Part shown: one piece after another, positions 29,759 to 50,173 of the stretch
Layout of the letters: each line of letters begins with the position of its first letter
Numbering within the stretch: position 1 is the stretch's first letter
Virus record (IMG/VR): IMGVR_UViG_3300007513_000001
Coordinates: 186,001 to 250,000 of that record
Strand: one strand, 5' to 3'
Length of the DNA stretch: 64,000 bases
The notes under the pieces: generated by a model
What the model was told of the DNA's origin: nothing
Database searches by the model: none
The model's input: only the letters and a program-made list of their open reading frames with translations
Position numbers and translations under genes: made by a program

Positions 29759-30464
29759 ATCAATAGAGCTTTATGGAGACGGCATTGGCTCTGTAGATTA
29801 TGTCGACCACATGGGTTCCGATCTTACTATTGTCAACAGCGCTCGCGTATCATTTGGCAAGCAAAAAATGACAATGGATAAAAGAGATGAAAAACTTATT
29901 AAGTACCTTATGGAACACAAGCACACCTCAACGATGGAACACAATATTGTTACGTTTCGTTTTACTGTTCCTCTTTACGTTAGGTCTCAGCATCATCGTC
30001 ATAGAACTTGGTCCTATAATGAGATCTCTCGCAGATACACGGATGTAGATATTAGATTTTATGAACCAAAATCTTTTAGAACTCAGCATGAATCAAATCG
30101 ACAAGCGTCTAATACAAAAGAATTAATCAATCCAGAGTTAAATTTGGGCGGCGGCAAATATAAGATGACAGCTGCGGAGGCATCAATCGGACTTCGAAAT
30201 ACTTCACTAGAACTTTTTAATTTATTGATTGAATCTGGTGTTTGCCGAGAACAAGCCAGAGGAATACTCCCGCAAAACATGTACACAGAATACTATGGTA
30301 CTGTCGATCTAAATAATTTGCTTAAATTTGTTGAGCTTAGAACGCATGATGGTGCTCAGTGGGAAATTCAAAAAGTCGCTGAAGCTTGTTTAGATATTGC
30401 TGAAACTCTGTGGCCAATTACTATTAATTGTTACAGAGAAACTAGGGGCAAAACTCATGAATGA
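29748..30464 (+). CDS. thyX: Flavin-dependent thymidylate synthase
   Basis: RHRTWSYNEISRRY signature, ARVSF, EQAR..LP and AQWEI. Start at ATG 29748 with GAGG SD. Confidence 0.95.
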   Translation: MENKSIELYGDGIGSVDYVDHMGSDLTIVNSARVSFGKQKMTMDKRDEKLIKYLMEHKHTSTMEHNIVTFRFTVPLYVRSQHHRHRTWSYNEISRRYTDVDIRFYEPKSFRTQHESNRQASNTKELINPELNLGGGKYKMTAAEASIGLRNTSLELFNLLIESGVCREQARGILPQNMYTEYYGTVDLNNLLKFVELRTHDGAQWEIQKVAEACLDIAETLWPITINCYRETRGKTHE

Positions 30465-35665: not shown

Positions 35666-38600
35666 GTGAAGGTTCCTAGTAAGTTTTTTGGTTTGCATTC
35701 CCATTCTGGTTTTTCTATTTTTGATGGTCTTGGATACCCCCAAGAGCATATTGACTTTTGCCGCGAAAATGGATTAGATGGTTGGTCTTTGACCGATCAT
35801 GGTCATATGAACGGTTTTGCGCATGCTTATCTCCATACAGAAAAATTAAATAAAGCTGGAGGCAACTTTAAGCTTATTCCGGGTTGTGAAATGTATGTCC
35901 ACCCAGATTTAGACGTGTGGAAGCTAGATTATGAAATAAACAAAATGGCTAAAAAAGGCGACAAAGAAGCTTTGGATATTCTAAAAAAGCAAAGAGAAGC
36001 AATTCAAACTCCGCTTTTAGCTTTTGTAGATGAACACGATGAAACTTTAGATGTCGGTTTAGAGGGTGCCTCTTTAACTGTTGAAAACGAGGAAGAAACG
36101 AAATCAGGAAAATTTTACGATCCAATCAAACGTCGACACCATTTAGTAGTTTTACCGAAAACGTCTGAAGGTCTACAAAGGTTGTTTCATTTGATTTCTA
36201 GAGGGTACACAGAAGGATTCTATAGGTTTCCAAGAGTGGACTATAAGATGCTTAAAGAGGCAGCCAAGGGAGGCCATCTAATGGTTTCGACAGCTTGTAT
36301 TGGCGGCCCTTTAGCTTATGACGTATTTCAACCACTACAAGAAACTAACTTTGAAGATCTTATTCCTTCGCTTTTTGATGACGAATCTTTGAGAAATAAA
36401 ATTCTTTCTAAGTTTGAATATTCTTATGACCAGCTCGCAGACGCTGTTGGCGAAGAAAACGTTATGCTAGAACTTCAATTCAACAAGCTTCCAGCTCAGC
36501 ACTTAGTGAATAGAGCAATATTAGAATTTGCAAGAACACGGTCTTTAACCGACCAACTTGTCGTTACTTGCGATTCTCATTATGCTTCTCCAGAGCACTG
36601 GAAAGAAAGAGAACTCTATAAAAAGTTGGGCTGGCTAAATTATAAAAGCTTTAATCCAGACAATCTTCCAAAATCTAAAGACGATCTTAAGTGTGAGCTT
36701 TATCCTAAAAATGCTCAACAGGTGTGGGAATCTTATCTTGAAACTTCTGCTGAGCATGATTTTTATAATAGCGATGAAATATTTGAAGCTATCGAAAGAA
36801 CTCACGATGTAGCTCACGAAATGATTGGCGAGATACACCCAGACCGCAAAATGAAACTTCCGTCGTATGTCGTTCCAGAAGGGGTGACAGCAAATAAAGC
36901 TCTTTTAGAAGCTTCTAAAGAGGGGCTGGTCAAGCGAGGGCTAGCAAATAAGCCAGAATATGTGGAGCGGATGAAAACCGAGCTAAAAGTTATTTTTGAT
37001 AAAAACTTTTCTGAGTATTTTCTTACAATGAAAGCAATTATTGATTTAGCTCGAGAAAAAATGCTAGCTGGCCCAGGTCGAGGCTCTGGTGCGGGATCTT
37101 TAGTAAACTATGCACTGTATATTACGGATATCGATCCTGTAGAATATGGGCTTTTGTTTGAGCGTTTTATGTCTCCAGAGCGTACTGAAATGCCAGATAT
37201 CGATACAGATATTGCGGATAGAGATGAGCTCATCAAGATTCTTAGAAGTAATTTTGGAAATAAAAACGTAATTCCAATTTCAAATTACAATACTTTTAAA
37301 ATCAAGAGTCTTCTTAAAGATGTATCTAGGTTTTACGGCATTGAGTTTTCTGAAGTAAACAAAACTTTAGCTTCATTAGAAAGAGAAGTAGCCCAAGGAA
37401 GAAAAGCTGACGGCGTAGATGCAGCTTTTGATATTAGTTTTGAAGAAGCTAAAAAGTATTCTACGAAAGTCAGAGATTATCTAGAAAAATACCCGCAAAT
37501 TGCTGATCCTATAAACGTGTTATATAAGCAAAACAAGGCTCTCGGCCGACACGCTGGTGGAGTAATTGTATCTGAAAAGATCGAAGAAAGAATGCCGTTG
37601 ATTGTTGCTAGGGGAGAAATGCAAACTCCTTGGGTAGAAGGCATGAACTATAAACATCTAGAAGAATTTGGGTGGATCAAATTTGATTTACTTGGATTGG
37701 AAACACTTAGAATTATTGAGAGGACTATTTCTCTTGTTTTAGAAAAGTCTGGAATAGAAAATCCTTCTTTCGAGCAAATTGTTGAATGGTACAATTCTCA
37801 TATTGCTCCAAATGTGATAGATTTCAACGACCAAAAAGTTTATGAAAATGTTTATCACTCTGGAAGATGGGCTGGAATTTTTCAGTGTACTCAGCGAGGA
37901 GCTCAAGCGCTTTTCAAAAGAGCTAAGCCGGTAGGGTTAGTTGATTTGGCTACTTTGACTTCTATTTACCGACCAGGTCCACTGTCTGCCAAAGTAGACA
38001 AACTTTATATTAAGGCTAAAAACAATCCAGAAAATGTTTTTTATGGTCATCCATTGATTGAACAAGTTCTTAATTCAACTTATGGAATGATTATTTTTCA
38101 AGAGCAAGTAATGGAGCTTTGCCACGTGGTTGCTGGATTCCCTAAAGCTGAATGTAACAAACTTAGAAAAATGATGAAGCCAGTTGGTTCTGGTAATGAA
38201 AACATAAAGAAAGCTGCCGCCCTTAAGAATAAGTTTGTAGAAGGCGCATCAAAAAATGGTGTAGAGAAAAATATTGCTAGCGAGCTTTATGATAGGATTC
38301 TGTATTTCTCTGGGTACGGATTTAATAAGTCTCACGCGGTTTCTTATGCTGTGAACTCATATCATTGTGCATGGTTCATGACCTATTTTGAACAAGAGTG
38401 GATTCAAGCTTACTTAGAAGCATGTTCAGGAAATCCTAAAAAGCTTTCAAAGGCTTTAAGCGAAGTAAAGGCGCTTGGCTATAAAATAGTCCCAATTGAC
38501 ATTAATAAAGCTGGTAAAGCTTGGACTTGCATAGACGATAATTCTTTGATGCCCTCATTTTTGTCTTGCAAAGGTGTGGGCGCAGCAGCGGTTGAAGAAA

Positions 38601-39265
38601 TTTTGGAAAAACGCCCTTACAAATCGCTTGAAGATATGTTTTGGAGTGAAGATGGAACTTGGAAGCATGCTAAATTCAACAAGAGAGCTATAGAGTCCTT
38701 GATAAAAATTAGAGCTTTTGACTCCCTAGAGTGCGTCGGCCCAGACAAAGATTTTAAGAGTTATGCGCATATGCACTCTGTTGTTATAGAAAACTTTAAC
38801 GAGCTTAGAAAACGTACTAAGAAAGATCCTTATCGTGGAAAAAATAATTTCTTTAAAATTCTTGTAGAGAGCTCTGAAATTTCTGAGTGGTCTTTCGACG
38901 CAATGATGAATTTTGAACAAGAGCTTTTGGGAACCATTAATGTAGAAGCTCTTTTACCAGAAAAATTTGTAAAAAGAATGAATGACAAAAATATTCTTTC
39001 TTTAGATGAACATTGTGGTAGAGAGTTTTACTGGTTTGTTTTAACAAAAGCAATCCCCAAACTCACAAAAAACAAGAAGCCGTACTTACTCTTGAACGGC
39101 ATAGCTTCAACAGGAAAATCTCATAGAATGTTTTGCTGGGGAGTGCCCAAAGATGCTGATTTAGATCCTTTTACTTTTTGCATCGCAGAAGTAGATAAAA
39201 ATGATTTCGGAATGTCTACGAAGTGGAACAGGATCAAAAAATTTAGCTTTAATGATCTTTCTTAA
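35666..39265 (+). CDS. dnaE: DNA polymerase III alpha subunit (family C)
   Basis: PHP motifs HSH..FS..DG, TDHG, GCE, CDSHY; also GPGRGSGAGSLV, FERF, PDIDTD, RHAGG, KFDLLGL and GYGFNKSHA. Confidence 0.96.
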   Translation: MKVPSKFFGLHSHSGFSIFDGLGYPQEHIDFCRENGLDGWSLTDHGHMNGFAHAYLHTEKLNKAGGNFKLIPGCEMYVHPDLDVWKLDYEINKMAKKGDKEALDILKKQREAIQTPLLAFVDEHDETLDVGLEGASLTVENEEETKSGKFYDPIKRRHHLVVLPKTSEGLQRLFHLISRGYTEGFYRFPRVDYKMLKEAAKGGHLMVSTACIGGPLAYDVFQPLQETNFEDLIPSLFDDESLRNKILSKFEYSYDQLADAVGEENVMLELQFNKLPAQHLVNRAILEFARTRSLTDQLVVTCDSHYASPEHWKERELYKKLGWLNYKSFNPDNLPKSKDDLKCELYPKNAQQVWESYLETSAEHDFYNSDEIFEAIERTHDVAHEMIGEIHPDRKMKLPSYVVPEGVTANKALLEASKEGLVKRGLANKPEYVERMKTELKVIFDKNFSEYFLTMKAIIDLAREKMLAGPGRGSGAGSLVNYALYITDIDPVEYGLLFERFMSPERTEMPDIDTDIADRDELIKILRSNFGNKNVIPISNYNTFKIKSLLKDVSRFYGIEFSEVNKTLASLEREVAQGRKADGVDAAFDISFEEAKKYSTKVRDYLEKYPQIADPINVLYKQNKALGRHAGGVIVSEKIEERMPLIVARGEMQTPWVEGMNYKHLEEFGWIKFDLLGLETLRIIERTISLVLEKSGIENPSFEQIVEWYNSHIAPNVIDFNDQKVYENVYHSGRWAGIFQCTQRGAQALFKRAKPVGLVDLATLTSIYRPGPLSAKVDKLYIKAKNNPENVFYGHPLIEQVLNSTYGMIIFQEQVMELCHVVAGFPKAECNKLRKMMKPVGSGNENIKKAAALKNKFVEGASKNGVEKNIASELYDRILYFSGYGFNKSHAVSYAVNSYHCAWFMTYFEQEWIQAYLEACSGNPKKLSKALSEVKALGYKIVPIDINKAGKAWTCIDDNSLMPSFLSCKGVGAAAVEEILEKRPYKSLEDMFWSEDGTWKHAKFNKRAIESLIKIRAFDSLECVGPDKDFKSYAHMHSVVIENFNELRKRTKKDPYRGKNNFFKILVESSEISEWSFDAMMNFEQELLGTINVEALLPEKFVKRMNDKNILSLDEHCGREFYWFVLTKAIPKLTKNKKPYLLLNGIASTGKSHRMFCWGVPKDADLDPFTFCIAEVDKNDFGMSTKWNRIKKFSFNDLS

Positions 39266-39300: not shown

Positions 39301-40146
39301 ATGGTTGAAAACTATATAAATTTAAATCAAGCGTTTGTTGAAGAATTAGTAGACCTCAAATTTAACGGTGAAGAAGTTAAGTCGAGAGGATTCACGCAAA
39401 AAGAAAAATTGTTTTGCTCTTTCATTATAAAAGATCCAACAGATCTAAAGATCAAAGTGCCCGCCCGCAAGTTTAATGAAGATTACGCTGTTTTAGAGTG
39501 GCTTTGGTATCTTACTTCCAATTGCGAAGTAAGCAATATTGGGAAGTTTGCTGATATATGGAATAAAATAGCTGATGAAGATAATTTAGTTGAATCAAAT
39601 TATGGAAGTTATATAAAGCCTGCTTGGTATGATTTAGTAAACGAGCTTCTTAACGATAGAGATACAAGAAGAGCTACTTGCGTAATTAACCAACCTCACC
39701 ATCGATGGAAAAATCCTAACGACTACCCCTGCACTCATTATATTCATTTTTTTATTAGAGGAGATGCTCTTCACTTGGGAGTTTACATGAGATCTAACGA
39801 TGCAGTTTTTGGTTTTTGCAATGACGTTTTTACTTTTGCGTTGTTTCAACAGCTTATGTTAAACGAACTAAATTCTCGTGGTGCTAATTTAAAGCTAGGC
39901 AATTATTACCATTCAGCTGGAAGCTTTCATGTTTATGATCGACATTACGAAATGCTAGAAAAAATCTCAAAAAACTACTTTAAGAAAGCTAGAAAAGAAG
40001 GGTATCCCACATTTGAAAAAATGACTTTAAATCCAGATTTAACTTGGCCAAAAATGGAAAAATTTATATCTTTTTTTGAAGAAAACCTAGACAAAGACGA
40101 AATATCGAGTAAGATTAAAGAGATTAGGGAGATTATCTTTCAATGA
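39301..40146 (+). CDS. Thymidylate-synthase-fold dNMP-modifying enzyme, dCMP hydroxymethylase-like
   Basis: TRRA, catalytic YPCT, MRSNDAVFGFCND and SFHVY. Has Asp at the position of E. coli ThyA Asn177. Confidence 0.85.
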   Translation: MVENYINLNQAFVEELVDLKFNGEEVKSRGFTQKEKLFCSFIIKDPTDLKIKVPARKFNEDYAVLEWLWYLTSNCEVSNIGKFADIWNKIADEDNLVESNYGSYIKPAWYDLVNELLNDRDTRRATCVINQPHHRWKNPNDYPCTHYIHFFIRGDALHLGVYMRSNDAVFGFCNDVFTFALFQQLMLNELNSRGANLKLGNYYHSAGSFHVYDRHYEMLEKISKNYFKKARKEGYPTFEKMTLNPDLTWPKMEKFISFFEENLDKDEISSKIKEIREIIFQ

Positions 40147-40424
40147 ATATTCTTGACGAAGCTAACAAAATTATTAACGAAAGATCTGAAGAAAAAGAAA
40201 GACAATATGGCCCGATGGGCGAAGGCTTAGAGCGCGCTGCAATGATTGCTTCTGGGATGACTGGAAAAGATTTTACTGCCGACGATATTTTTGCTGCTTT
40301 AGTAGCTCTTAAGTTTTCGAGGCACTCATACAATTATAAAGAAGATAATTTTTTAGATGCCGCAGCTTATCTGGGCGCGTGGAATAACTACATTCAAAAG
40401 GGTTTGAAAAATGAAAATAAGTAA
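40143..40424 (+). CDS. Small all-alpha protein (DUF6378 / NTP-pyrophosphohydrolase-like)
   Basis: IL.EA..II..R....YG and LK.SR.......D...D...Y pattern. Confidence 0.6.
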   Translation: MNILDEANKIINERSEEKERQYGPMGEGLERAAMIASGMTGKDFTADDIFAALVALKFSRHSYNYKEDNFLDAAAYLGAWNNYIQKGLKNENK

Positions 40425-40845
40425 AGTAAGAAGTGTTAAAACTCCAACTCGAGGAACTCCTGAATCTGCAGGCATAGATTTTTATGTTCCGCAAGGAATG
40501 GTTGTTAGCTTACCTCCGGGTTATTCTTGTTTGATGCCAAGCGGAATAAAGGCTAATGTTCCAGCAGGCCATGCTTTAATTGCATTTAACAAGAGTGGCG
40601 TAGCTGTAAAAAAGAATCTCCACGTCGGCGCATGCGTTGTTGATGAAGATTATCAAGGAGAGATCCATATTAACTTGATCAATGTTGGCAGAGAAACAGT
40701 GAAAATTTCTTCTGGAGAAAAAATTATACAATTTGTTTTACTTCCAGTATTTTATGACACAATTGAAGAAGTAGAACTAGAAAATCTTTATGAACAACAA
40801 ACCCAGCGCGGCGAAGGCGGATTTGGAAGTACGGGAGTTGAGTGA
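40411..40845 (+). CDS. dut: Trimeric dUTPase
   Basis: SAGIDF, KSG, VDEDYQGEI, IIQFV and RGEGGFGSTG. Confidence 0.93.
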   Translation: MKISKVRSVKTPTRGTPESAGIDFYVPQGMVVSLPPGYSCLMPSGIKANVPAGHALIAFNKSGVAVKKNLHVGACVVDEDYQGEIHINLINVGRETVKISSGEKIIQFVLLPVFYDTIEEVELENLYEQQTQRGEGGFGSTGVE

Positions 40846-41900
40846 TGAATTATTTTGTAGATTATGAATTACCAAAAAGTTGCAAAATCGGTATTGATGG
40901 ATTAGAGCGCAATATTCCAACTCGTAAACATAGTCACAACGCGGCTTGGGTTCATTTGTATAAAAACATGCTTCAATCTGCCGGCTGGGAAGACGTTCAC
41001 GTCTTGGGAAATCATGATACTTACGAAGGCTATGAAGCCATGATTTTTTATCCTGGAATTGCTTATTCGGGAGCCATTAATTTCTTTTTTGGAGTGGATG
41101 ATAATGTCGTTAGAAGATTTTCTAGAGTTCAAGACTTTGAAGGCCCGACATTTATTTTAAATCATGAAATGCCCCTTATCGGAAACACGATCAAAGGAAG
41201 ACTTCATAATAAATCTACTAGTAGTCGAGTTGGAAACCTTAAGCTAGACTTGTTAGACGATATCTGCAAGTCTACTCGTAGAATCGACTATGTAGAAAGA
41301 TCGAAAAAACTTTGTTTTGGAGACAGCCACTGCTTCTCAACTTATGCCCCCGGGTATTCTGTTTGTCGAAACGATGGTCTTACACTTTTTTCTACTTTAC
41401 GAAATGGAGTGAAGCAAACCATTGAAGAAAAATCGGGTATGATGACTAAAGATTTAACTCATCTTACGTTTTATATGGGTAATATTGATATTCGACATCA
41501 CCTCATGAGACAAGAAAACCCTTTTGAAAAAGCCCATGCAATGGGAATAGAATTGGGATACCAGCTTAAATCTTTAGGCATTCCAAACATAGAAATTGTT
41601 CACGTTCTTCCAATTGAAAATATTTCTCGAAAACTTCCAAAAACTGGCTACTATAAGAAGACTCCATATTTTGGAACTTGGGAAGAAAGAACCAAACTAG
41701 TCAATACATTTAACAACGCTGTGGATAAAATTTGTATAGAAAACAAATGGAATACTTTCCATTGGCCCGAAGAGTTTTTAAATGATTCTAAAGAGTTGGA
41801 TTTTGAATATATGGAGCGTCCAAAAAGTGTTCATTTAAGCCCAGTTTCTTATAGGTGGGATCTTTTTGAAAATAAATTAAATAGCTTGCATAGTAGCTAA
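40842..41900 (+). CDS. Conserved phage protein with an SGNH/GDSL-like C-terminal domain
   Basis: FGDSH (block I), G..L (block II), YMGNIDIRHH (block III) and SVHL (block V). Confidence 0.55.
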   Translation: MMNYFVDYELPKSCKIGIDGLERNIPTRKHSHNAAWVHLYKNMLQSAGWEDVHVLGNHDTYEGYEAMIFYPGIAYSGAINFFFGVDDNVVRRFSRVQDFEGPTFILNHEMPLIGNTIKGRLHNKSTSSRVGNLKLDLLDDICKSTRRIDYVERSKKLCFGDSHCFSTYAPGYSVCRNDGLTLFSTLRNGVKQTIEEKSGMMTKDLTHLTFYMGNIDIRHHLMRQENPFEKAHAMGIELGYQLKSLGIPNIEIVHVLPIENISRKLPKTGYYKKTPYFGTWEERTKLVNTFNNAVDKICIENKWNTFHWPEEFLNDSKELDFEYMERPKSVHLSPVSYRWDLFENKLNSLHSS

Positions 41901-41914
41901 AAATGGAGAAAAAT

Positions 41915-43105
41915 ATGCCAAAAAATAAATCAATTCGAGTTGCAATTGTCGGTGTCGGAAATTGCGCTAATTCTTTCTATCAAGGATTAACATATTATGC
42001 TGGATACACCGAAGGCCAAGAGCGCGACGGCGTTATGAAGAGCCGAATCGGAGGATATTCAGTAGCTGACCTCGATGTTGTAGCTGCGTTTGATATAGAC
42101 AAAAGAAAAGTCGGCAAGTGTTTTAGAGAAGCTATGTGGGCTAAACCAAACTGTACTCCAGAATATGAACCTAATGTTCCCGATGGTCCAATAGTTCAGA
42201 TGGGCCCAGTGTTAGATGGGGTACCGTCTTTGATGAAATCTTATCCAGACGATGAAGCTTTTAGACCAGCTGATTTAGAGCCCGTAGATGTGGCTCAGAT
42301 ATTAACAGACTTAAAGGTGGATATTCTAATCAACTATCTACCAGTGGGTTCTCAGAAGGCTACTGAGTGGTATGCAGAACAGTGTCTAAAGACGGGAGTT
42401 TCTCTTCTTAACTGTATTCCAGTCTTTATTGCTTCTAATCCAATTTGGGAACAGAAGTTTATTGATGCTGGAATTCCTTTGGTTGGGGACGATATGAAAT
42501 CTCAGTTTGGGGCGTCTATTTTATCTCAAATGCTGCAAGAATTAGCTTTCGCCCGAGGACTAAATGTGAATGCTCATATTCAGCGTAATGTTGGTGGAAA
42601 TACTGATTTCTTGAATATGGTCGATCAATCTAGGTTAAAGTATAAAAAGGTTTCTAAGGAAAATGTAATTCGATCTCAGCATGTTATCAGGGGAGTTGAT
42701 CCAGAAGAATCATTCTTACATGCTGGCCCTTCAGAATATATTCGTTTTTATGGAGATAACAAGGTTGCCAATTTTAGAGTAGAGATGGAAGGTTTCCTCG
42801 GCGCACCAGTAATTCTAGACGCGCAACTTTCCGTAATCGACTCTCCAAACTCTGGTGGAGTTGTTATCGACGCGGCTCGATATCTAAAGGTTGCGAGAGA
42901 AATGGGGATTGTTGGAGCTTTGCGTGGGCCATCTGCCTTTACGCAAAAAACCCCGCCCCAACAATTAATGTTTTCAGAAACTCTTTACGAATGCGACGCT
43001 CTTTCAGAGAGAAAGCTTACTAGATTTACAAAGAGGCAAACTCAAAATTACAGTGCGGAAGAGTTGTATCAATCTTGCCCAGCAGGAAACAAGGAAGTAG
43101 ATTAA
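41915..43105 (+). CDS. ino1: Myo-inositol-1-phosphate synthase (bacterial/archaeal type)
   Basis: VAIVGVGNCA, AFDID.RKVG, NYLPVGS, GDD.KSQ.GA, NVGGNTDFLNM, YGDNK and DSPNSGGVVIDA. Confidence 0.95.
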   Translation: MPKNKSIRVAIVGVGNCANSFYQGLTYYAGYTEGQERDGVMKSRIGGYSVADLDVVAAFDIDKRKVGKCFREAMWAKPNCTPEYEPNVPDGPIVQMGPVLDGVPSLMKSYPDDEAFRPADLEPVDVAQILTDLKVDILINYLPVGSQKATEWYAEQCLKTGVSLLNCIPVFIASNPIWEQKFIDAGIPLVGDDMKSQFGASILSQMLQELAFARGLNVNAHIQRNVGGNTDFLNMVDQSRLKYKKVSKENVIRSQHVIRGVDPEESFLHAGPSEYIRFYGDNKVANFRVEMEGFLGAPVILDAQLSVIDSPNSGGVVIDAARYLKVAREMGIVGALRGPSAFTQKTPPQQLMFSETLYECDALSERKLTRFTKRQTQNYSAEELYQSCPAGNKEVD

Positions 43106-43106: not shown

Positions 43107-43823
43107 ATGCCGAAAATCCACGAGCAAAAAGGGAAATTATTTAATCCTGAAGCTGGAAATTTTGAAGAATGCATTATTAAACTAAACCCTCGTAATAACT
43201 TTTGGTATCGTCCTGGCACTTTTGATCTTAATTCTATTAGAGAGTGCCGAGACAACTATAGTGAAATAGACACTTGCGGAAAAGTTGTTCTAGATCTGGG
43301 TGCCAATATTGGCGGTTTTGCTCGGATGGCTCTTCAAAAGGGCGCGAAACAAGTTATTGCTCTAGAGCCGTGCCCATATAATTTTCAACTGCTAGAGATT
43401 AATGCTGAAAATGCTGAAAACATAAATGCAGCAGTTTCAGAAGAAGATACTGATAGCGTTGTTTTTCATTATGCTAGTTCTAAAAGAAATTCTGTTTCTT
43501 CTTCTACGGTTCGACGCAGAAACGCTTCGGGAACCACTATTTCAGTCCCAGGCCTTTCTTTTGGAGGGCTATTAGAGAAATATAAGCCTGAAATTCTTAA
43601 AATTGATATCGAAGGAAAAGAGTATGATATTTTAGATTCGATTAAAGAGATACCAGATTTTGTAGAAGTTGTTGGTATTGAATTTCACAATACTCGAAAA
43701 CCATATTCGGAATATCCTTCTCGTTTTTTTCCAGAATCTACTTGGAAAAAAGTAGAGCACCCTATTTTGATGTACGGACAGAAAAAGGTTTTAGATTACA
43801 CATTTTATCGCAAAGTTGTTTAG
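43107..43823 (+). CDS. FkbM-family SAM-dependent (O-)methyltransferase
   Basis: VLDLGANIG, ALEP...NF..L..N and LKIDIEG.EY....EFH. Confidence 0.88.
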   Translation: MPKIHEQKGKLFNPEAGNFEECIIKLNPRNNFWYRPGTFDLNSIRECRDNYSEIDTCGKVVLDLGANIGGFARMALQKGAKQVIALEPCPYNFQLLEINAENAENINAAVSEEDTDSVVFHYASSKRNSVSSSTVRRRNASGTTISVPGLSFGGLLEKYKPEILKIDIEGKEYDILDSIKEIPDFVEVVGIEFHNTRKPYSEYPSRFFPESTWKKVEHPILMYGQKKVLDYTFYRKVV

Positions 43824-43832: not shown

Positions 43833-44249
43833 ATGGTTGTTAATGGTTTTGATATTGACGGAGTGATTCACCTTGGAGATAGTGTCTGTGGAATCCGCCC
43901 TGGTCCTGGTGATGTGATTATTACCGGTCGAAGTTTTGAGGAAGAGGCCGAAACTCTAGCTTTTCTTCGTCGTAATGGAATTAATAATCCAGTATTTTTT
44001 AACCAGTGTCATTATGATGAAAAAACTCGTGAAGGTTCTGGTTGGCACAAAGGCGAAACTATTAAGTTGTTGCATCGAGCTGGCCTCAGCATTCGATATT
44101 TTTTCGAAGACGATGAAGTTCAAAAAGCCGAAATTGAAAGAATTTTAGCAGAAAAAGAAATCTGGAATATGCCAACCAAAGTAATTCACGTTAACAATCC
44201 ACATGTAGCGAAAGAGAATAGACGTCACTTAGAGGATTTACATGAGTAA
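43833..44249 (+). CDS. Capless HAD phosphatase
   Basis: GFDIDGVI, IITGRS, HK and FFEDD. Confidence 0.85.
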   Translation: MVVNGFDIDGVIHLGDSVCGIRPGPGDVIITGRSFEEEAETLAFLRRNGINNPVFFNQCHYDEKTREGSGWHKGETIKLLHRAGLSIRYFFEDDEVQKAEIERILAEKEIWNMPTKVIHVNNPHVAKENRRHLEDLHE

Positions 44250-45687
44250 TTCTGAGCTTCTTAAAATGACTGATAAGCAGCTTTTTGATGAAATTCCCTC
44301 TCATAAAAAGCAAGATTTTATAGACTTTATAAAAGAGCTTAATCGAAGAGAGTATTTAGTTAGATTTGCAAAATCGTGCACCTTTGAAAGCTTTCAGCAT
44401 TTACCTGGTACTTCTTTTAAATTTGGTAATGGTTTTATCGTAAATGGAAAATCAGTCCCTTATTTCCACCCCAATCGTAGCTTTCATGATGAAATTATTT
44501 GGTTGAATGAAAATCTTTTCTACAACCCTCATGCTACTTTTGAAGACAAGCTCATCAACGCAGCGATTGTAAAGTTTTATGGGCCATCTAACACTTTGAA
44601 GCTTATTGCTAGCGGAACAGGAAAGAATTTTGTAGATTATAAACGATTCATAGGAGACGCTAAGTATCTTCAACAAGTTTGTGTAAATTTGGAAACAGCT
44701 GTGAAAAATAAAGAGAAGATATACGGAACCACAGAACTAAGAACAAGCCTACAAACTGCTGCTCGAAACTACGCAAGAGACGTTGGTTCTCCAATAGATA
44801 AACTTGAATTAATTCCGTTGGTAGATAGAAAAGTTAGATCATGTCGACCTTCTGATATTCTTTTTTGGTTTACTAAGATCGGTCCAGATTTTGTAAATTT
44901 TTATAAGAAGACTCCAAACATGGAAGAGTCTTTCAAGTTTTTAAATTCTTTTAGAGGGATTGGAAATTATTATGGTTATCATTTTAGTTGCAATCTTGCT
45001 CGTATGCCCTCCGTTGGAAATTTAATATTCAAGGGTACCCCTGGCAAAATCGATGAAGATGATGAATATGTTGTTCCGGGTGTTGGAGCGATGTCTGCGA
45101 TAAATTGGTTTTATGAACACCGCGGCCACTCTATAAACACAAAAGTTGGAAAAAAATTAATAAACGCTATTCGCGAACACCAAAATGATTTCTTCGATTT
45201 AAAGAAATCTGACAATTCTAAATTTTATATGGAAAAAGTTTCTGAGCTTGGGTATTTTACTAATTTCGGCTGTGAAATATCTTGCTGCCAGTTCGGAGTT
45301 TATCGAAGATTAAGAGAAGATAAAAAATTAGCTTTAAGAAGAGCAGCTGCACCAATTTCAAAAGAGGAAGTCAAAATGATTCTTACGCCAAAAACCCTAA
45401 TGCAAAAACTGGGTCTTATTTCAGAAGATAAGCCTTCTGAAGAACACATCCAAACCACCAATCCCGCTTTAGATTTTTCTTCTACAAGCAAAGAAGATTT
45501 AATTCTTGCTATTGTCGATGAATCTGGAGGAGCTTGTTCACATTCTGCAGTGGCAAAAATGATAGAAGAAAAGGGATATACTCAATATAAACAGTCTGGA
45601 AGCTGGAAAGAAAGCTGGGTAATAATGAGAGAATTAGTTAAAAAGGGTGCTCTAGTTAAAGATGGAAAATTTTATCGGAGGTCGTAA
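44242..45687 (+). CDS. aGPT-Pplase / amino acid:DNA transferase-like protein (HhH glycosylase fold) with a C-terminal wHTH-like tail
   Basis: GIGNYYGYH...NL (HhH), VVPGVGA..AI and EISCCQF..Y, matching the family G.G.f.a / GpGa / E...Ce..ky pattern. Confidence 0.65.
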   Translation: MSNSELLKMTDKQLFDEIPSHKKQDFIDFIKELNRREYLVRFAKSCTFESFQHLPGTSFKFGNGFIVNGKSVPYFHPNRSFHDEIIWLNENLFYNPHATFEDKLINAAIVKFYGPSNTLKLIASGTGKNFVDYKRFIGDAKYLQQVCVNLETAVKNKEKIYGTTELRTSLQTAARNYARDVGSPIDKLELIPLVDRKVRSCRPSDILFWFTKIGPDFVNFYKKTPNMEESFKFLNSFRGIGNYYGYHFSCNLARMPSVGNLIFKGTPGKIDEDDEYVVPGVGAMSAINWFYEHRGHSINTKVGKKLINAIREHQNDFFDLKKSDNSKFYMEKVSELGYFTNFGCEISCCQFGVYRRLREDKKLALRRAAAPISKEEVKMILTPKTLMQKLGLISEDKPSEEHIQTTNPALDFSSTSKEDLILAIVDESGGACSHSAVAKMIEEKGYTQYKQSGSWKESWVIMRELVKKGALVKDGKFYRRS

Positions 45688-46865
45688 TGCAAAACGTGAG
45701 GTGGGGAACTATCATTCCCCTTATTGGGGGTAGCGCTATAGGGTGCTCTCAAGCCACTAAAAATAAGCCAGAATTTCATCTTAGTTATTCTGCTTTTGGC
45801 GCTAACGAAAAGTATTTAACCGATTATTGGAAAGACGTACCTCGTATAGTTTTAGATGAAGGTGGAGAAATCCCAAATCAGCAAATTGATTTTATCAACT
45901 CAGTTTGTCCATGCGCGGGTTTAAGTCAGCTTAATACTTCTAGAAGCAAAGATATGCGTGAATCTAAAAATTACTGGATGTACGAATCCGCTCAAAGGAT
46001 AATGGGAGAACTTAAACCGAGAGTTTACTGGGGAGAAAATGCTCCCGGCCTTTTTACTAATTCGGGTGCGTACGTACGTGACAAGCTTAAAACCCTGGCC
46101 AAAGAACATGGTTATTCCTTTTCTCTTTATAAAACTGATACTCAAAAACATGGAATACCACAGCGAAGAGTAAGAACTTTTTATTTTTTTTGGAGAGATA
46201 CTAATCCGCCTATTTTAAATTATTTTGATCAAACTCCTGTCCCTTTTGCAGAGTACATCAAAGAGATACCAGATACAGCAACTTTACAAGATCAGTTTAA
46301 TATTGCGGGAAAAATTTCTGACAATTTTGATTCTTACGCTTTCGTTCTTCAGAAGTTGAAAATAACCCACAGAGAATTCGTGAAATCTAATGATTCCGGG
46401 TCTATTCATTCAATTTTTTCTTACCTTGCTGAAAATGAACTTTTAAAAGAGTGCATAGACTGGATAGAAAAAAACAAAAATGAAGAAACAGCTGAACACA
46501 GAAGATTGAAAGCTATTTATAAAAAAGTTCAATCTGGTGGGAGATTTATGGATGCTTCTCCGGGGTATTATTATGCTAGAACTAACGCTATAGTGGGAAG
46601 GACTTTAACGCATTTAGTTCACCCCACTGAAGATCGCGGCATGTCTATTCGAGAGCTGCTTCATATGATGGGGCTGCCTCATGACTTTGAAATGAGCGAT
46701 AGAAAATCCTTGAATGTAATAGCGCAGAACGTTCCTACGTGTACAGCCCGAGATATGGCTACTCAAGTTATTGAATACTTAAACGGTGGTTTACAAATTG
46801 CAGAAAACAGTTTTTTAATGCAAAATAACTTAAAACAGGAGACCACGTTATGCGAGCCCTTGTAA
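45687..46865 (+). CDS. DNA cytosine-C5 methyltransferase-fold protein with an atypical motif I
   Basis: Motif IV CPCAGLS, VI ENAP, VIII PQRRVR, IX R.MS.RE...MGLP and X AQNVP. Motif I reads IPLIGG instead of FxGxGG. Confidence 0.85.
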   Translation: MQNVRWGTIIPLIGGSAIGCSQATKNKPEFHLSYSAFGANEKYLTDYWKDVPRIVLDEGGEIPNQQIDFINSVCPCAGLSQLNTSRSKDMRESKNYWMYESAQRIMGELKPRVYWGENAPGLFTNSGAYVRDKLKTLAKEHGYSFSLYKTDTQKHGIPQRRVRTFYFFWRDTNPPILNYFDQTPVPFAEYIKEIPDTATLQDQFNIAGKISDNFDSYAFVLQKLKITHREFVKSNDSGSIHSIFSYLAENELLKECIDWIEKNKNEETAEHRRLKAIYKKVQSGGRFMDASPGYYYARTNAIVGRTLTHLVHPTEDRGMSIRELLHMMGLPHDFEMSDRKSLNVIAQNVPTCTARDMATQVIEYLNGGLQIAENSFLMQNNLKQETTLCEPL

Positions 46866-47836
46866 CTGGAGGTTGCGGATTTATTGGATCATGCATCTCT
46901 AAAAAATTAGTAGATTCAGGATGGGATGTTGAGATAGTTGACGATATGTCTAATGGGAATTATGAGTTTTTAGATGGCTATCGCATAAGATCAGTTCCGG
47001 TTCAGCTTGGTGAAAGTTTTGAAAACCAAGTCAAAAAGCAAGAACATCAAATTTTAGTTTTGGTTGGAGATTTTACTAGCTACGAAGTCGTTAGAAGAAT
47101 TGTGGAAAAAAAATATGATGTAATATTTCATTGCGCAGCCAATCCACGCGTAGAATACTCAGTTCAAAACCCTGTTGAAACAACAGACGAAAATCTAACT
47201 AAAACAATTAAGCTTTTTACTCACTCTATTGGAAACGTCAAAAGGATAGTGTTTTCCTCTAGTTGTTCAATATACGGTGATCCGTGGACTCTTCCTACTA
47301 CAGAATCTCACGGAAAAAATCCAAATAGTCCATACGCGCTTCAAAAGCTTTGTGTCGAAGAGTTTGCGCGACTGTATTCTAAAACTTATGATTTAGACAT
47401 AGCTTGTTTGCGATACTTCAATGTTTATGGCCCTTATCAATATGGAGGGTCTCCATATTCTACAGCTATCGTATCTTGGTGTGACAAAGTAAAAAATGGT
47501 TTACCGCTTCGCAGTGATGGTGATGGAACGCAGTCTAGAGATATGGTTTTTGTAGAAGACGTTGCGAGAGCAAATATTTTAGCTGCGACTCATAAAGAAA
47601 ACTTTAGTGGAAAATGCATTAATATTGGAACTGGAGCTTCTTATACTAATAATCAAATTTTAGATATTTTTAAGTCTAAGTTTCCCGACATAGAAATTAG
47701 TCATGCACCAGAAAGATCCGGAGACGTAAAACACACTCAGGCATGCACAAAAGAAGCAAGGAATTTTTTAGGATTCAGAACTGAATATTCTTTAGAAGAA
47801 GGTCTAGAAAAAACTTTTGACTGGTGGGAGATTTGA
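46850..47836 (+). CDS. NAD-dependent NDP-sugar epimerase/dehydratase
   Basis: GGCGFIG, FSSS...YG, YALQK, LRYFNVYGP and GDG.Q.RD. Confidence 0.92.
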   Translation: MRALVTGGCGFIGSCISKKLVDSGWDVEIVDDMSNGNYEFLDGYRIRSVPVQLGESFENQVKKQEHQILVLVGDFTSYEVVRRIVEKKYDVIFHCAANPRVEYSVQNPVETTDENLTKTIKLFTHSIGNVKRIVFSSSCSIYGDPWTLPTTESHGKNPNSPYALQKLCVEEFARLYSKTYDLDIACLRYFNVYGPYQYGGSPYSTAIVSWCDKVKNGLPLRSDGDGTQSRDMVFVEDVARANILAATHKENFSGKCINIGTGASYTNNQILDIFKSKFPDIEISHAPERSGDVKHTQACTKEARNFLGFRTEYSLEEGLEKTFDWWEI

Positions 47837-48393
47837 TGAAAAATGAATTTGTTATGTTTGTCGGACCCATGTTTGGTGGGAAAACTACTAAACTTTTAAG
47901 CGCGATAGACAGATATCGATATCAAGGTAGAGACATTCATGTGTTTAAACCGATAGTAGATGAAAGATATTCTAAGGAAGAAATAGTAACCCATTGGGGA
48001 ACTAAAATTCCAGCTACTAGAATCACCTCTCCAGTTAGCAGCCTTCATCCAGTATTTGAGCCTTTCTATCACCTTAAAGAATCTTGCGTTTTAGCAGTAG
48101 ATGAAGCTTTTATGTTAGAGGGAGTTGGAAAAGTTTTGGTCGACCTGTTTAGAAGAGGCCACACAGTGCTTGTTTCTTCTCTTCAGCTTTCTTCTGATTT
48201 TACTCCATATAAAGAGCTTCAAACCATGCTTCCGTACGCTACAAAAGTAGAAGTTTGTCCGGCAGTATGCTCTACGTGCGGCGCAGACGCGCACTATACT
48301 AAAAAGGTTGGCGGTCGTTCTGATCACGCAATCGAGGTAGGGGGATCAGAGATGTATCAGCCTAAGTGTTTAGAGCATTTTTATTTGGGATAA
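47836..48393 (+). CDS. tdk: Thymidine kinase
   Basis: GPMFGGKTT, D.RY, VDEA, C..CG and Y.P.C..H. TGATG coupling to the preceding gene. Confidence 0.9.
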   Translation: MKNEFVMFVGPMFGGKTTKLLSAIDRYRYQGRDIHVFKPIVDERYSKEEIVTHWGTKIPATRITSPVSSLHPVFEPFYHLKESCVLAVDEAFMLEGVGKVLVDLFRRGHTVLVSSLQLSSDFTPYKELQTMLPYATKVEVCPAVCSTCGADAHYTKKVGGRSDHAIEVGGSEMYQPKCLEHFYLG

Positions 48394-48869: not shown

Positions 48870-49775
48870 ATGACAGTAACTGACCCATCTTCAGTCAATG
48901 TAGTGATATATCACGCAGACTGCACTGACGGATTCGGAGCTGCATACGCAGCTTGGAAACTACTTGGAAATAGAGCTGAATATCATGCATGTAAACATGG
49001 TAAACCACCGCCAGACGTAAAAGGAAAAGTTGTTGCTATTTTAGATTTTTCTTATGACAATGCTACAACTAAACGAATGATAGAAGACGCGGAAGGGCTG
49101 ATCATCATCGATCATCATAAGTCAGCAGTCGTAGAATTGCACGATATCAGTAATGCTATTTTTGATATGGCTCATTCTGGAACAGTTCTTTCTTGGAACT
49201 TTTTTCACCCGGGAAAAGAATCTCCTAAGTTTTTGACTTATATTGAAGATCGCGATCTTTGGAAGTGGGAACTCCCATATTCAAAAGAATTTAGTGCAGC
49301 ATTTGATATGGTTCCATTTGAATTCGAGGAATTTGAAAAATTTGAAGACGATTCTGTATTCGATGACGCTGTAAAACGAGGTTCTTACATTTTGGCGTAT
49401 TCAAAAACTGTTGTAAAGAAAGTTTGTGAAAAAGCTGAGCCGAGAAAGTTTGAAGGTAAGGATGTACTAGTCGTCAATGCGTCTCACTGGATGTCAGAGA
49501 TTGGAGCTCGTCTTTCTCCAGACTGCGATTTTGCGATGATCTGGTATTGGGATCACGTTGCGCAGCACACTAAAGTTTCTCTAAGAGCTTTTCATGAAAC
49601 TGTGGACGTTTCTGAAATTTCTAAAAAGTTCGGTGGCGGCGGCCACAAAAAAGCAGCTGGATTTCAGCTTTCCAAAAGTAAGCATGTTGAAGATTTATTT
49701 GATAAGCCGAAAACAACTAGAAAAAAATCTACTAAATCTTCAGCTAAAACTGTAAAGAAAACGGAGACTTCTTGA
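48870..49775 (+). CDS. DHH/DHHA1 phosphoesterase
   Basis: YH.DC.DG, DHH, EDRDLW, SLR and GGGGH..AAG. Confidence 0.9.
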   Translation: MTVTDPSSVNVVIYHADCTDGFGAAYAAWKLLGNRAEYHACKHGKPPPDVKGKVVAILDFSYDNATTKRMIEDAEGLIIIDHHKSAVVELHDISNAIFDMAHSGTVLSWNFFHPGKESPKFLTYIEDRDLWKWELPYSKEFSAAFDMVPFEFEEFEKFEDDSVFDDAVKRGSYILAYSKTVVKKVCEKAEPRKFEGKDVLVVNASHWMSEIGARLSPDCDFAMIWYWDHVAQHTKVSLRAFHETVDVSEISKKFGGGGHKKAAGFQLSKSKHVEDLFDKPKTTRKKSTKSSAKTVKKTETS

Positions 49776-50173
49776 GACCGTCGTGGGATAAAATATGGAT
49801 GGATTTCGCAAGCTCAATCGCTGAGAGATCTTACGACCCAAGATTTCAAGTGGGCGCTGTTATTATTACTGAAGACAACAGCCAAGTTTTAGCTGTTGGA
49901 TATAACGGAAATTACGCTGGAGGTCCCAATGAAGTAGAATCAGAAACCCCTGGGGAATCTGGCATGCTTCATGCTGAAATTAATGCATTACTTAAAATGG
50001 ATTACAACAACCCTAAAAAGAAAAAGCTTTATCTAACTCTTTCTCCTTGTAGAATGTGCGCAAAGGCTATAATTAATAGCGGAATTAATGAAGTAGTTTA
50101 TGCTGAATCTTATAGGGACCTATCGGGGATAGAACTTTTAAAAGAATGTGGCATATCTGTAAGACACGTTTGA
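49772..50173 (+). CDS. dCMP deaminase
   Basis: VGAVI, GYNG, HAE.NA and SPC.MC. Confidence 0.92.
   Translation: MRPSWDKIWMDFASSIAERSYDPRFQVGAVIITEDNSQVLAVGYNGNYAGGPNEVESETPGESGMLHAEINALLKMDYNNPKKKKLYLTLSPCRMCAKAIINSGINEVVYAESYRDLSGIELLKECGISVRHV

What the first reader, a model, noticed from the sequence alone, without database searches (positions are those of the whole stretch)
39301..40146. ThyA-like enzyme carries the cytosine-specificity Asp, alongside ThyX
RSNDAVFGFCND aligns with E. coli ThyA RSCDVFLGLPFN, putting Asp at Asn177 as in T4 dCMP hydroxymethylase. The substrate is therefore probably dCMP, giving hm-dCMP, m-dCMP or hydroxy-dCMP. This is notable because characterised aGPT-Pplase pathways act on hmU, so a cytosine-based version would be new. 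An alternative route is hm-dCMP converted to hm-dUMP by the dCMP deaminase at 49772.
Basis: partly seen in the sequence, partly recalled or inferred. Interest (0 to 1): 0.7.

Follow-up and report, generated by a model that had tools for sequence, protein, structure and literature searches.

The report
Phage dCMP hydroxymethylase beside a variable island
This gene of a 293-kb marine jumbo phage is very probably a T4-type enzyme that turns dCMP into 5-hydroxymethyl-dCMP, an ordinary kind of enzyme, but it sits next to an undescribed gene cassette that is found only with such enzymes and may decorate hydroxymethylcytosine in DNA in a new way.

Summary
ORF 39301-40146 (+, 281 aa) is a ThyA-family protein. 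Its motif RSNDAVFGFCND puts Asp175 at E. coli Asn177, which is T4 gp42 Asp179. ThyX (29658-30464) and a dCMP deaminase (49772-50173) are also present.

Three published diagnostic positions all read as in T4 gp42:
- Asn177 to Asp, meaning a cytosine substrate.
- Leu143 to Asp, plus a Ser-x-Tyr motif, meaning hydroxymethyl rather than methyl.
- Asp169 retained, meaning it is not a flavin 5-hydroxy-dCMP synthase.

Controls in the same alignment behaved as expected: SPO1, SP10, M6, ViI and PhiW-14 dUMP hydroxymethylases, the RB69 5-hydroxy-dCMP synthase, and ThyA/Td. Asp177 is invariant in 120 close homologues and in 143 cluster representatives. The enzyme itself is a new member of a known kind, and ThyX plus dCMP deaminase repeats T4's Td/Cd logic.

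The "aGPT-Pplase" link is only partly right. The genome has no 5-hmdU DNA kinase and no amino-acid:DNA transferase. It has only a weak clade-1 (PF18723) homologue.

That homologue belongs to a conserved cassette of SGNH-like, inositol-phosphate-synthase-like, HAD and PF18723-like genes. In 80 viral contigs, every hydroxymethylase-type gene found with this cassette was the Asp (dCMP) type. An uncharacterised hydroxymethylcytosine modification is therefore plausible but unproven.

The parts
39301..40146 (+). ThyA-family dCMP hydroxymethylase (predicted 5hm-dCMP synthase). Key residues: Glu66, Ser99-Asn-Tyr101, Asp141, Cys144, Arg164-Ser165, Asp167, Asp175, His210, Tyr212.
40143..40424 (+). DUF6378 protein that follows the hydroxymethylase in all three relatives checked. 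Function unknown; a helical bundle.
40411..40845 (+). Trimeric dUTPase.
40842..41900 (+). SGNH/GDSL-hydrolase-like protein. GDSH (160-163), GNxD (213-216) and His331 are conserved in at least 95% of 59 homologues. It is fused to the PF18723-like protein in Aeromonas T4-like phages.
41903..43105 (+). Protein of the myo-inositol-1-phosphate synthase family, very strongly conserved.
43107..43823 (+). FkbM-type methyltransferase.
43833..44249 (+). Small HAD-like phosphatase with a conserved DxDG motif at residues 7-10.
44242..45687 (+). PF18723 ('HMUDK_hel', aGPT-Pplase clade 1, M6 gp55 type) homologue. Glu345 and Cys349 are conserved in at least 95% of 64 homologues.
45687..46865 (+). C5-cytosine DNA methyltransferase homologue with PC, ENA, QxRxR, RE and QNVP motifs conserved.
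46850..47836 (+). NAD-dependent sugar epimerase/dehydratase.
47824..48393 (+). Thymidine kinase.
48870..49775 (+). DHH/DHHA1 phosphoesterase.
49772..50173 (+). dCMP deaminase.
29658..30464 (+). ThyX flavin-dependent thymidylate synthase. The Pfam match starts at residue 49, so the true start is probably downstream of 29658.
35666..39265 (+). DNA polymerase III alpha-type replicase, immediately upstream and syntenic in relatives.

Best explanation
The ORF encodes a folate-dependent deoxycytidylate hydroxymethylase, a functional equivalent of T4 gp42. Cys144 attacks C6 of dCMP. Asp175 reads the N3/N4 face of cytosine. Methylene-tetrahydrofolate donates the carbon. The exocyclic methylene intermediate is then trapped by a water molecule activated by Asp141, with Ser99 and Tyr101, instead of being reduced, which gives 5-hydroxymethyl-dCMP. 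After phosphorylation the phage polymerase incorporates it as 5-hydroxymethylcytosine. ThyX, fed with dUMP by the dCMP deaminase and dUTPase, makes ordinary dTMP in parallel, as Td and Cd do in T4. Shown here: family membership, the active-site signature, its conservation and the synteny. Inferred: the activity, the incorporation into DNA and how much cytosine is replaced. The genes between the dUTPase and the thymidine kinase form a variable island that probably decorates the hydroxymethyl group after replication. This last step is inference from context only.
For: (1) The best sequence matches among solved structures are cytosine hydroxymethylases: MilA at 2e-22 and T4 dCH at 3e-18. Classical ThyA scores 1e-5 to 5e-11.
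(2) Of the 12 residues within 6 A of C5 listed in PMC13326640, 11 are identical to T4 gp42 and 6 to E. coli ThyA.
(3) The diagnostic positions read Leu143 to Asp, Asp169 kept, and Asn177 to Asp, with a Ser-Asn-Tyr motif. The published rules are: Asn177Asp means dCMP (PMC8670742, PMC6400193). Asp three residues before the Cys plus Ser-x-Tyr means hydroxymethylation, and T4 D145N makes no product (PMC6400193). Asp169Asn means 5-hydroxy-dCMP synthase (PMC13326640).
(4) Controls in the same alignment behave as published. Five dUMP hydroxymethylases have Asn177. RB69 has Glu143/Asn169/Asp177. The Td and ThyA sequences have Leu/Asp/Asn.
(5) The MilA residues that set CMP preference (Ala176, Lys133) are Ser and Arg here, as in dCMP enzymes (alignment; PMC6400193).
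(6) Asp177 and all catalytic residues are invariant in 120 and in 143 homologues.
(7) In the tree, the Asn-type dUMP hydroxymethylases form one clade (SH-aLRT 98). The target lies in an all-Asp group with T4 gp42 (SH-aLRT 87).
(8) The AF2 model has pLDDT 97.8. The best folds are MilA (TM 0.78-0.81) and T4 dCH. The Pfam ThyA profile match ends at position 222 of 266, so the ThyA C-terminal tail is not matched.
(9) The order ThyX - Fpg - PolIII alpha - hydroxymethylase - DUF6378 - dUTPase - [variable genes] - dCMP deaminase (with TK and DHH in two of the three) is conserved in three relatives sharing 53-61% identity with the target.
Against: No enzyme assay exists for this protein or any close relative. 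The nearest characterised enzyme is only about 28% identical. No homologue of T4 gp1 dNMP kinase, gp56 dCTPase or beta-glucosyltransferase was found in the 293-kb genome by phmmer. The route from hm-dCMP to hm-dCTP and the exclusion of dCTP are therefore unexplained. A complete-looking C5-cytosine DNA methyltransferase sits in the same island, which is odd if cytosine is fully replaced. The residue rules come from a limited number of tested enzymes.
Confidence: 0.8

Rival explanations
1. It is a dCMP hydroxymethylase, but most hm-dCMP is deaminated by the phage dCMP deaminase to hm-dUMP. The DNA would then carry hydroxymethyluracil derivatives, and the PF18723-like protein would act on hmU as in M6 or ViI.
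For: A dCMP deaminase is present and conserved. PF18723 relatives are known from thymidine-hypermodifying phages.
Against: ThyX is conserved alongside, so normal dTMP is made. T4 has the same deaminase without making hmU. There is no 5-hmdU DNA kinase and no AADT in the genome. The same PF18723-like protein occurs, fused to the SGNH domain, in Aeromonas T4-like phages. Those phages carry the hmC gene set (gene 42, 56, alc, denB) (PMC2993671). No Asn-type enzyme accompanies the cassette in 80 loci.
Confidence: 0.07
2. It is a dCMP methyltransferase that makes 5-methyl-dCMP, of the Xp12 type.
For: Asp at Asn177 alone converts ThyA into a dCMP methylase (cited in PMC8670742).
Against: Position Leu143 is Asp, Trp83 is Ile, and the Ser-x-Tyr motif is present. 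The ThyA C-terminal tail that closes the folate site for hydride transfer is not matched (PMC6400193). I had no sequence of a natural dCMP methylase to use as a control.
Confidence: 0.04
3. It is a flavin-dependent 5-hydroxy-dCMP synthase like RB69 gp48 or DLP3 gp80.
For: It belongs to the same Asp177 superfamily branch. The solved flavin enzyme 9iqc is also a fold match.
Against: The diagnostic Asp169Asn change is absent here and in all 143 representatives. The RB69 control shows it in the same alignment (PMC13326640).
Confidence: 0.03
4. It is a CMP (ribonucleotide) hydroxymethylase like MilA, feeding a nucleoside metabolite or RNA rather than DNA.
For: MilA is the best sequence and fold match, including the C-terminal helices.
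Against: The two MilA residues whose mutation switches CMP to dCMP preference are already in the dCMP state here (Ser165, Arg123) (PMC6400193). The gene lies between the replicase and dUTPase/TK/dCMP deaminase.
Confidence: 0.03
5. It is a dUMP-utilising enzyme: a thymidylate synthase or a dUMP hydroxymethylase.
For: It carries the Pfam thymidylate synthase family match, and automatic annotations call its relatives 'thymidylate synthase'.
Against: Asp at 177, Thr at 147 and Met at 165 differ from every dUMP enzyme in the control set. ThyX already supplies dTMP.
Confidence: 0.02

Closest known systems
Bacteriophage T4 gp42 deoxycytidylate hydroxymethylase (PDB 1b5d, 6a9a)
   Same: ThyA fold. Identical at 11 of 12 residues around C5, including Asp145, Cys148, Asp171 and Asp179 equivalents and Ser94-x-Tyr96. 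It is accompanied by a separate thymidylate synthase and a dCMP deaminase.
   Different: Only about 28% identical. It has 69 residues after the His-x-Tyr motif, against 28 in T4, and these form MilA-like C-terminal helices. No gp1, gp56 or glucosyltransferase homologues were detected. The thymidylate synthase is ThyX, not Td.
MilA CMP 5-hydroxymethylase of Streptomyces rimofaciens (PDB 5b6d, 5jnh)
   Same: Best sequence match (E 2e-22) and best fold match (TM about 0.8), including the C-terminal extension. It has Asp at both diagnostic positions.
   Different: MilA's ribose-selecting Ala176 and Lys133 are Ser and Arg here. The genomic context here is phage DNA replication, not antibiotic synthesis.
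dUMP hydroxymethylases of SPO1 (gp29), SP10, M6, ViI and PhiW-14
   Same: Hydroxymethylase signature Asp at Leu143. They are phage enzymes feeding post-replicative hypermodification.
   Different: They have Asn177, Cys-Asn and Asn/Gln-Arg-Ser motifs and form a separate clade. Their downstream enzymes (5-HMUDK, AADT) are absent here.
5-hydroxy-dCMP synthases (RB69 gp48, DLP3 gp80, phage HY126; PDB 9iqc)
   Same: Asp177, acidic residue at 143, and the same fold.
   Different: They carry Asn at Asp169 and use flavin and O2. The target keeps Asp169.
M6 gp55 / Pfam PF18723 (aGPT-Pplase clade 1, now 'HMUDK_hel')
   Same: The neighbouring 481-aa protein matches over the C-terminal half. It shares a GPGA motif and a Glu...Cys pair (hhalign E 3e-4, probability 39%).
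   Different: The similarity is weak. The partner is an SGNH-like protein rather than a P-loop kinase. It is associated with dCMP- rather than dUMP-hydroxymethylases.

Membership tests
T4 gp42-type dCMP hydroxymethylase (5hm-dCMP synthase) | ThyA/PF00303 fold with catalytic Cys, Glu58, Arg166, Ser167, His207, Tyr209 and the two Arg of the partner subunit | tested here: met
   Pfam 59.5 bits. All residues are present and invariant in homologues. AF2 pLDDT 97.8, with fold matches.
T4 gp42-type dCMP hydroxymethylase (5hm-dCMP synthase) | Asp at E. coli Asn177 (cytosine specificity) | tested here: met
   Asp175. It is invariant in 120 and in 143 homologues.
T4 gp42-type dCMP hydroxymethylase (5hm-dCMP synthase) | Asp/Glu three residues before the catalytic Cys (E. 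coli Leu143) and a Ser/Thr-x-Tyr motif (hydroxymethylation signature, PMC6400193) | tested here: met
   Asp141-x-x-Cys144 and Ser99-Asn-Tyr101. All four are invariant in alignment A1.
T4 gp42-type dCMP hydroxymethylase (5hm-dCMP synthase) | Asp retained at E. coli Asp169 (folate chemistry, not flavin hydroxylation) | tested here: met
   Asp167 here. The RB69 control shows Asn in the same alignment.
T4 gp42-type dCMP hydroxymethylase (5hm-dCMP synthase) | Converts dCMP plus methylene-THF to 5hm-dCMP plus THF | not testable with these tools
   Needs an enzyme assay.
T4-type hmC nucleotide pathway | Phage dNMP kinase (gp1) and dCTPase (gp56) that channel hm-dCMP and exclude dCTP | tested here: not met
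   phmmer of T4 gp1, gp56 and ViI dnk against all ORFs of the genome gave no hit at E up to 1. The P-loop ORFs examined are RecA, PhoH, PrkA, AAA_5 and TK. DUF6378 against gp56 gave only BLASTP E 0.004 over 36 residues, with no fold support.
dUMP hydroxymethylase (SPO1 gp29 type) | Asn at E. coli Asn177, with Cys-Asn and Asn/Gln-Arg-Ser motifs | tested here: not met
   The target has Asp, Cys-Thr and Met-Arg-Ser. It lies outside the Asn clade in the tree.
5-hydroxy-dCMP synthase (RB69 gp48 type) | Asn at E. coli Asp169 | tested here: not met
   Asp167.
Thymidylate synthase ThyA | Leu143, His147, Gln165, Asn177 and the C-terminal tail closing the folate site | tested here: not met
   The target has Asp, Thr, Met and Asp at these positions. 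The profile match stops at 222/266.
Thymidine hypermodification pathway (5-HMUDK plus amino-acid:DNA transferase) | P-loop 5-hmdU DNA kinase (PF18748) | tested here: not met
   No match in the whole genome at E up to 1. No phmmer hit to the M6 or ViI kinases in 80 related loci.
Thymidine hypermodification pathway (5-HMUDK plus amino-acid:DNA transferase) | AADT / aGPT-Pplase clade 2 (PF18724) | tested here: not met
   No match in the genome. hhalign to M6 gp51 gave probability 0.1%.
Thymidine hypermodification pathway (5-HMUDK plus amino-acid:DNA transferase) | aGPT-Pplase clade 1 / PF18723 protein | tested here: met
   30.4 bits against a cut-off of 25. hhalign to M6 gp55 gave E 3e-4 and probability 39%. 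The match is weak, and the activity of this clade is not established (PMC8989533).

The most novel reading that the evidence does not exclude
The SGNH-like, inositol-phosphate-synthase-like, HAD and PF18723-like genes (with FkbM methyltransferase, C5-methyltransferase homologue and epimerase in some lineages) form a previously undescribed pathway that hypermodifies 5-hydroxymethylcytosine in DNA without a DNA kinase. The SGNH domain occupies the place next to the PF18723 protein that the P-loop kinase holds in M6 and ViI. It would activate or transfer at the hydroxymethyl group, for example by forming an ester. The PF18723-like protein would use its conserved Cys and Glu. The appended group could be a cyclitol made by the synthase and phosphatase. 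The same enzyme pair, fused, would explain how Aeromonas phages 44RR, 31 and 25 manage with gene 42 but no glucosyltransferase.
Probability: 0.3. Interest if true: 0.8.

Novelty: new member of a known kind. Interest (0 to 1): 0.5.

Why it matters
The enzyme call tells us that a widespread group of marine jumbo phages, with hundreds of homologues in ocean metagenomes, very probably puts 5-hydroxymethylcytosine in its DNA. That affects how their DNA behaves in restriction, CRISPR targeting and some sequencing and library methods.

More interesting is the hypervariable island between the dUTPase and the thymidine kinase. It looks like the counterpart of the variable glucosyltransferase genes of T-even phages. 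One version of it is a conserved cassette, undescribed in the papers I could search, that is tied to dCMP hydroxymethylases across at least four deep lineages. It gives a concrete and cheap experimental entry to a possible new cytosine hypermodification. It also bears on the unknown function of clade-1 aGPT-Pplase (PF18723) proteins.

Tried and rejected
- DUF6378 as the missing dCTPase. BLASTP to T4 gp56 gave only E 0.004 over 36 residues. There was no PDB sequence hit. The AF2 model (pLDDT 82.5) had no significant Foldseek match in PDB or Swiss-Prot. HisE-type pyrophosphatases appeared only at probability 0.18. Left as unknown.
- A phage dNMP kinase. None was found.
- Nucleotide-level relatives among cultured phages. 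Megablast of 15 kb found nothing. The best cultured-phage protein hits are about 37% identical.
- The inositol-phosphate-synthase-like gene as a marker of hydroxymethylpyrimidine phages. Rejected: Caulobacter phage Cr30 has only a canonical ThyA, and Stenotrophomonas phage Moby has no ThyA-family gene and carries it inside a 7-deazaguanine cluster.
- The Walker-A-like string GFIVNGKS in the PF18723-like protein. I judged it a chance match: there is no kinase-domain match and only Gly64 of it is invariant in A2.
- Technical points. A MAFFT L-INS-i run timed out and was replaced by --auto. That row was dropped and the job rerun.
- Literature. I found no paper linking inositol synthase or SGNH genes to phage DNA modification. 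This covers only the held library.
- Missing control. I could not obtain a natural dCMP methylase (Xp12) sequence.

Full report
**Where the window lies.** The window is bases 186001-250000 of a 293,409-bp IMG/VR virus record with direct terminal repeats, rated 100% complete. It is a jumbo phage. GC content is about 35-44% and GC skew is positive across nearly the whole window. Nearly all long ORFs are on the + strand. No tRNA genes lie in the window. Relatives come from Tara, JGI and ENA marine samples and from misbinned MAGs.

**The observation.** The ORF is exactly as stated: 39301-40146, + strand, 281 aa.
- It passes the Pfam thymidylate-synthase threshold (59.5 bits), but only over profile positions 46-222 of 266.
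- Among solved structures the best sequence matches are not thymidylate synthases. They are MilA CMP hydroxymethylase (E 2e-22) and T4 dCMP hydroxymethylase (E 3e-18). E. coli ThyA scores about 1e-5.
- The motif RSNDAVFGFCND aligns with T4 RSNDVVFGFRND, so Asp175 falls on T4 Asp179, which is E. coli Asn177.
- ThyX (29658-30464, with an RHR motif) and a dCMP deaminase (49772-50173) are present.
- It is the only ThyA-family gene in the genome.

**Which reaction.** Three published residue rules can be applied.
- Asn177 to Asp switches the substrate from dUMP to dCMP (PMC8670742, PMC6400193).
- An Asp or Glu three residues before the catalytic Cys (E. coli Leu143), together with a Ser/Thr-x-Tyr motif, marks hydroxymethylation. 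T4 D145N makes no 5hm-dCMP (PMC6400193).
- Asp169 to Asn marks the recently discovered flavin-dependent 5-hydroxy-dCMP synthases of RB69, DLP3 and others (PMC13326640).

I fetched control enzymes from their genome records and aligned them with the target. The controls were:
- T4 and Aeromonas phage 31 gp42;
- SPO1 gp29 and the ThyA homologues of SP10, M6, ViI and PhiW-14;
- the RB69 gp42-like protein;
- RB69 and Aeromonas phage 31 Td;
- Cr30 and E. coli ThyA.

Every control read as published.

| Enzyme group | Position 143 | Position 169 | Position 177 |
|---|---|---|---|
| ThyA / Td | Leu | Asp | Asn |
| dUMP hydroxymethylases | Asp | Asp | Asn |
| RB69 5-hydroxy-dCMP synthase | Glu | Asn | Asp |
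| T4 gp42 | Asp | Asp | Asp |
| Target | Asp | Asp | Asp |

- The target also has Ser99-Asn-Tyr101, Cys-Thr and Met-Arg-Ser-Asn-Asp, exactly as in T4.
- Of the 12 residues within 6 A of C5, 11 are identical to T4 gp42.
- The two MilA residues whose mutation converts CMP to dCMP preference (Ala176Ser, Lys133Arg) are already Ser and Arg here (PMC6400193).

The predicted product is therefore 5-hydroxymethyl-dCMP. It is not 5-methyl-dCMP, 5-hydroxy-dCMP or hm-CMP.

**Conservation and phylogeny.**
- All 120 listed homologues (50-100% identity) keep Asp177 and every catalytic residue.
- An exhaustive profile-free search of 1.84 billion cluster representatives found 2822 relatives at E up to 1e-10.
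- All 143 of the best 150 that were long enough to align have Asp177, Asp169 and an Asp at 143.
- In a maximum-likelihood tree the Asn-type dUMP hydroxymethylases form one well-supported clade (SH-aLRT 98).
- The target lies in an all-Asp group that also holds T4 gp42 (SH-aLRT 87).
- The backbone of the tree is weakly resolved.
- The AF2 model is very confident (pLDDT 97.8). Foldseek ranks MilA first (TM 0.78-0.81, covering the C-terminal helices), then T4 dCH. The fold alone does not separate the subfamilies.

**Context.** Three relatives sharing 53-61% identity with the target have a similar backbone: ThyX, Fpg, PolIII alpha, hydroxymethylase, DUF6378, dUTPase, a variable stretch, then dCMP deaminase. 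TK and DHH phosphoesterase lie between the variable stretch and the deaminase in two of the three relatives.
- The variable stretch differs between relatives. One (L027) has the same seven genes as the window. Another has only an epimerase and a small ORF. A third has three unrelated ORFs.
- This is the pattern of T-even phages, where gene 42 is constant and the decorating enzymes vary.
- ThyX plus dCMP deaminase mirrors T4 Td plus Cd, so the deaminase needs no special explanation.
- What is missing is a gp1-like dNMP kinase and a gp56-like dCTPase.
- DUF6378 is very highly conserved and follows the hydroxymethylase in all three relatives. It could not be shown to be a pyrophosphatase.

**The "aGPT-Pplase" question.** Scanning the M6 and ViI proteins showed how Pfam now names these families.
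- The characterised transferase (M6 gp51, clade 2) is PF18724, "ADDT".
- The characterised kinase (M6 gp54, ViI gp67) is PF18748.
- PF18723, "HMUDK_hel", is M6 gp55, a clade-1 protein that was not needed for the reconstituted M6 reaction (PMC8989533).
- The genome has no PF18748 and no PF18724.
- It has one PF18723 match of about 30 bits, the 481-aa protein at 44242-45687.
- Profile comparison with M6 gp55 is modest: E 3e-4, probability 39%. It aligns a GPGA motif and a Glu...Cys pair. That pair is conserved in at least 95% of 64 homologues (Glu345, Cys349).

The characterised pathway is therefore not present. A distant clade-1 relative is.

**A conserved cassette tied to dCMP hydroxymethylases.**
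- PHROG 17781 covers both the ORF at 40842-41900 and the PF18723-like protein.
- In Aeromonas T4-like phages 31 and 44RR the two are fused into one 795-aa protein, ORF233c.
- Those phages have an Asp-type gp42, no match to T4 beta-glucosyltransferase and, per PMC2993671, no glucosyltransferase genes.
- The ORF at 40842-41900 has conserved GDSH and GNxD blocks and a conserved His. Its relatives' models resemble SGNH hydrolases.
- I then fetched 80 IMG/VR loci encoding a relative of the PF18723-like protein, at 24-100% identity and spanning at least four depth classes.
- Almost all also carry the SGNH-like gene, the inositol-1-phosphate-synthase-like gene and the small HAD phosphatase. Many carry the FkbM methyltransferase, and about 18 carry the C5-methyltransferase homologue.
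- A ThyA-family gene lay within 10 kb in 33 loci. Thirty had the full Asp143/Cys146/Asp169/Asp177 signature. Two were truncated ORFs ending in the Asp residues that could be read. Two were canonical ThyA-type ORFs (Leu143/Cys146), one full-length and one truncated.
- None was an Asn-type hydroxymethylase, and no locus had a homologue of the 5-hmdU kinase or the AADT.
- I checked five large records where no such gene was nearby. The three largest fragments each had an Asp-type gene elsewhere. The other two, 23% and 64% complete, had none.
- The loci are not independent samples, so this is an association across a few deep lineages, not a statistic.

**What I infer from this.** The cassette probably acts on hydroxymethylcytosine DNA.
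- The SGNH domain sits next to the PF18723 protein, where the P-loop kinase sits in M6 and ViI.
- This suggests an analogous pair of activating enzyme plus DNA-binding or catalytic partner.
- The synthase plus phosphatase would supply a cyclitol. A cyclitol ether or ester on the 5-hydroxymethyl group is one possibility.
- None of this is shown.

Two facts weigh against a simple story.
- The synthase-like gene also occurs in phages without any hydroxymethylase. In Moby it lies inside a 7-deazaguanine cluster, and Cr30 has only ThyA.
- A C5-cytosine methyltransferase homologue with all catalytic motifs conserved sits in the island. That is unexpected if every cytosine already carries a C5 substituent.

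**Verdict.** The enzyme is a new member of a well-known kind, a dCMP hydroxymethylase (confidence 0.8).

Noticed in passing
window 40842-47836; L027, L028, L029: The genes between the dUTPase and the thymidine kinase (dCMP deaminase in L028, which has no TK) form a hypervariable island. The flanks are syntenic in relatives sharing 53-61% identity with the target, but the content differs completely: seven genes here and in L027, two in L028, and three unrelated ORFs in L029.
   Followed up: partly
window 40842-45687; loci L037-L116: The SGNH-like, inositol-phosphate-synthase-like, HAD and PF18723-like genes travel together in nearly all of 80 viral contigs. They are accompanied only by Asp-type (dCMP) hydroxymethylases.
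   Followed up: partly
L024:4879-7266 (Aeromonas phage 31 ORF233c): This is a 795-aa fusion of the SGNH-like and PF18723-like proteins. It occurs in T4-like Aeromonas phages that have gene 42 but no glucosyltransferase, making it a candidate for their unknown DNA decoration.
   Followed up: partly
window 45687-46865: A C5-cytosine DNA methyltransferase homologue has all catalytic motifs conserved, in a phage predicted to replace cytosine with hydroxymethylcytosine. It recurs with the cassette in distant lineages. Its role is unexplained: partial replacement, action on host DNA, or a different chemistry on hmC.
   Followed up: partly
window 40143-40424: DUF6378 follows the hydroxymethylase in all three relatives checked and is far better conserved (about 70-98% identity) than its neighbours. 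It is a helical bundle with no significant structural match. In other phages it is fused to DUF4406.
   Followed up: yes
L025:8004-9254 (Stenotrophomonas phage Moby); L026:7995-9176 (Caulobacter phage Cr30): The inositol-phosphate-synthase-like gene (44-55% identical) also sits inside a 7-deazaguanine (FolE-QueC-DpdA-QueE) cluster in Moby. In Cr30 it lies near a cupin and a P-loop protein annotated as 'terminase small subunit'. The 5-hmdU kinases of M6 and ViI carry that same misannotation.
   Followed up: no
G000:C1:81575-114596 (outside the window): A large glycan-synthesis region has three GT2-type and four GT1-type glycosyltransferase matches and a Polysacc_synt_2 dehydratase. It could glycosylate DNA, virions or host surface.
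   Followed up: no
window 31502-33144: A sulfotransferase-like gene lies next to an Fpg/Nei DNA glycosylase. The glycosylase is conserved beside ThyX in all three relatives examined.
   Followed up: no
window 48429-48869: A small cupin (PHROG 'cysteine dioxygenase') lies between the thymidine kinase and the DHH phosphoesterase. Cr30 carries a gene annotated cysteine dioxygenase about 3.5 kb from its inositol-phosphate-synthase-like gene.
   Followed up: no
whole genome G000: No homologue of a phage dNMP kinase was found, although hm-dCMP must be phosphorylated. The genome does encode PrkA-like and PhoH-like P-loop proteins.
   Followed up: partly
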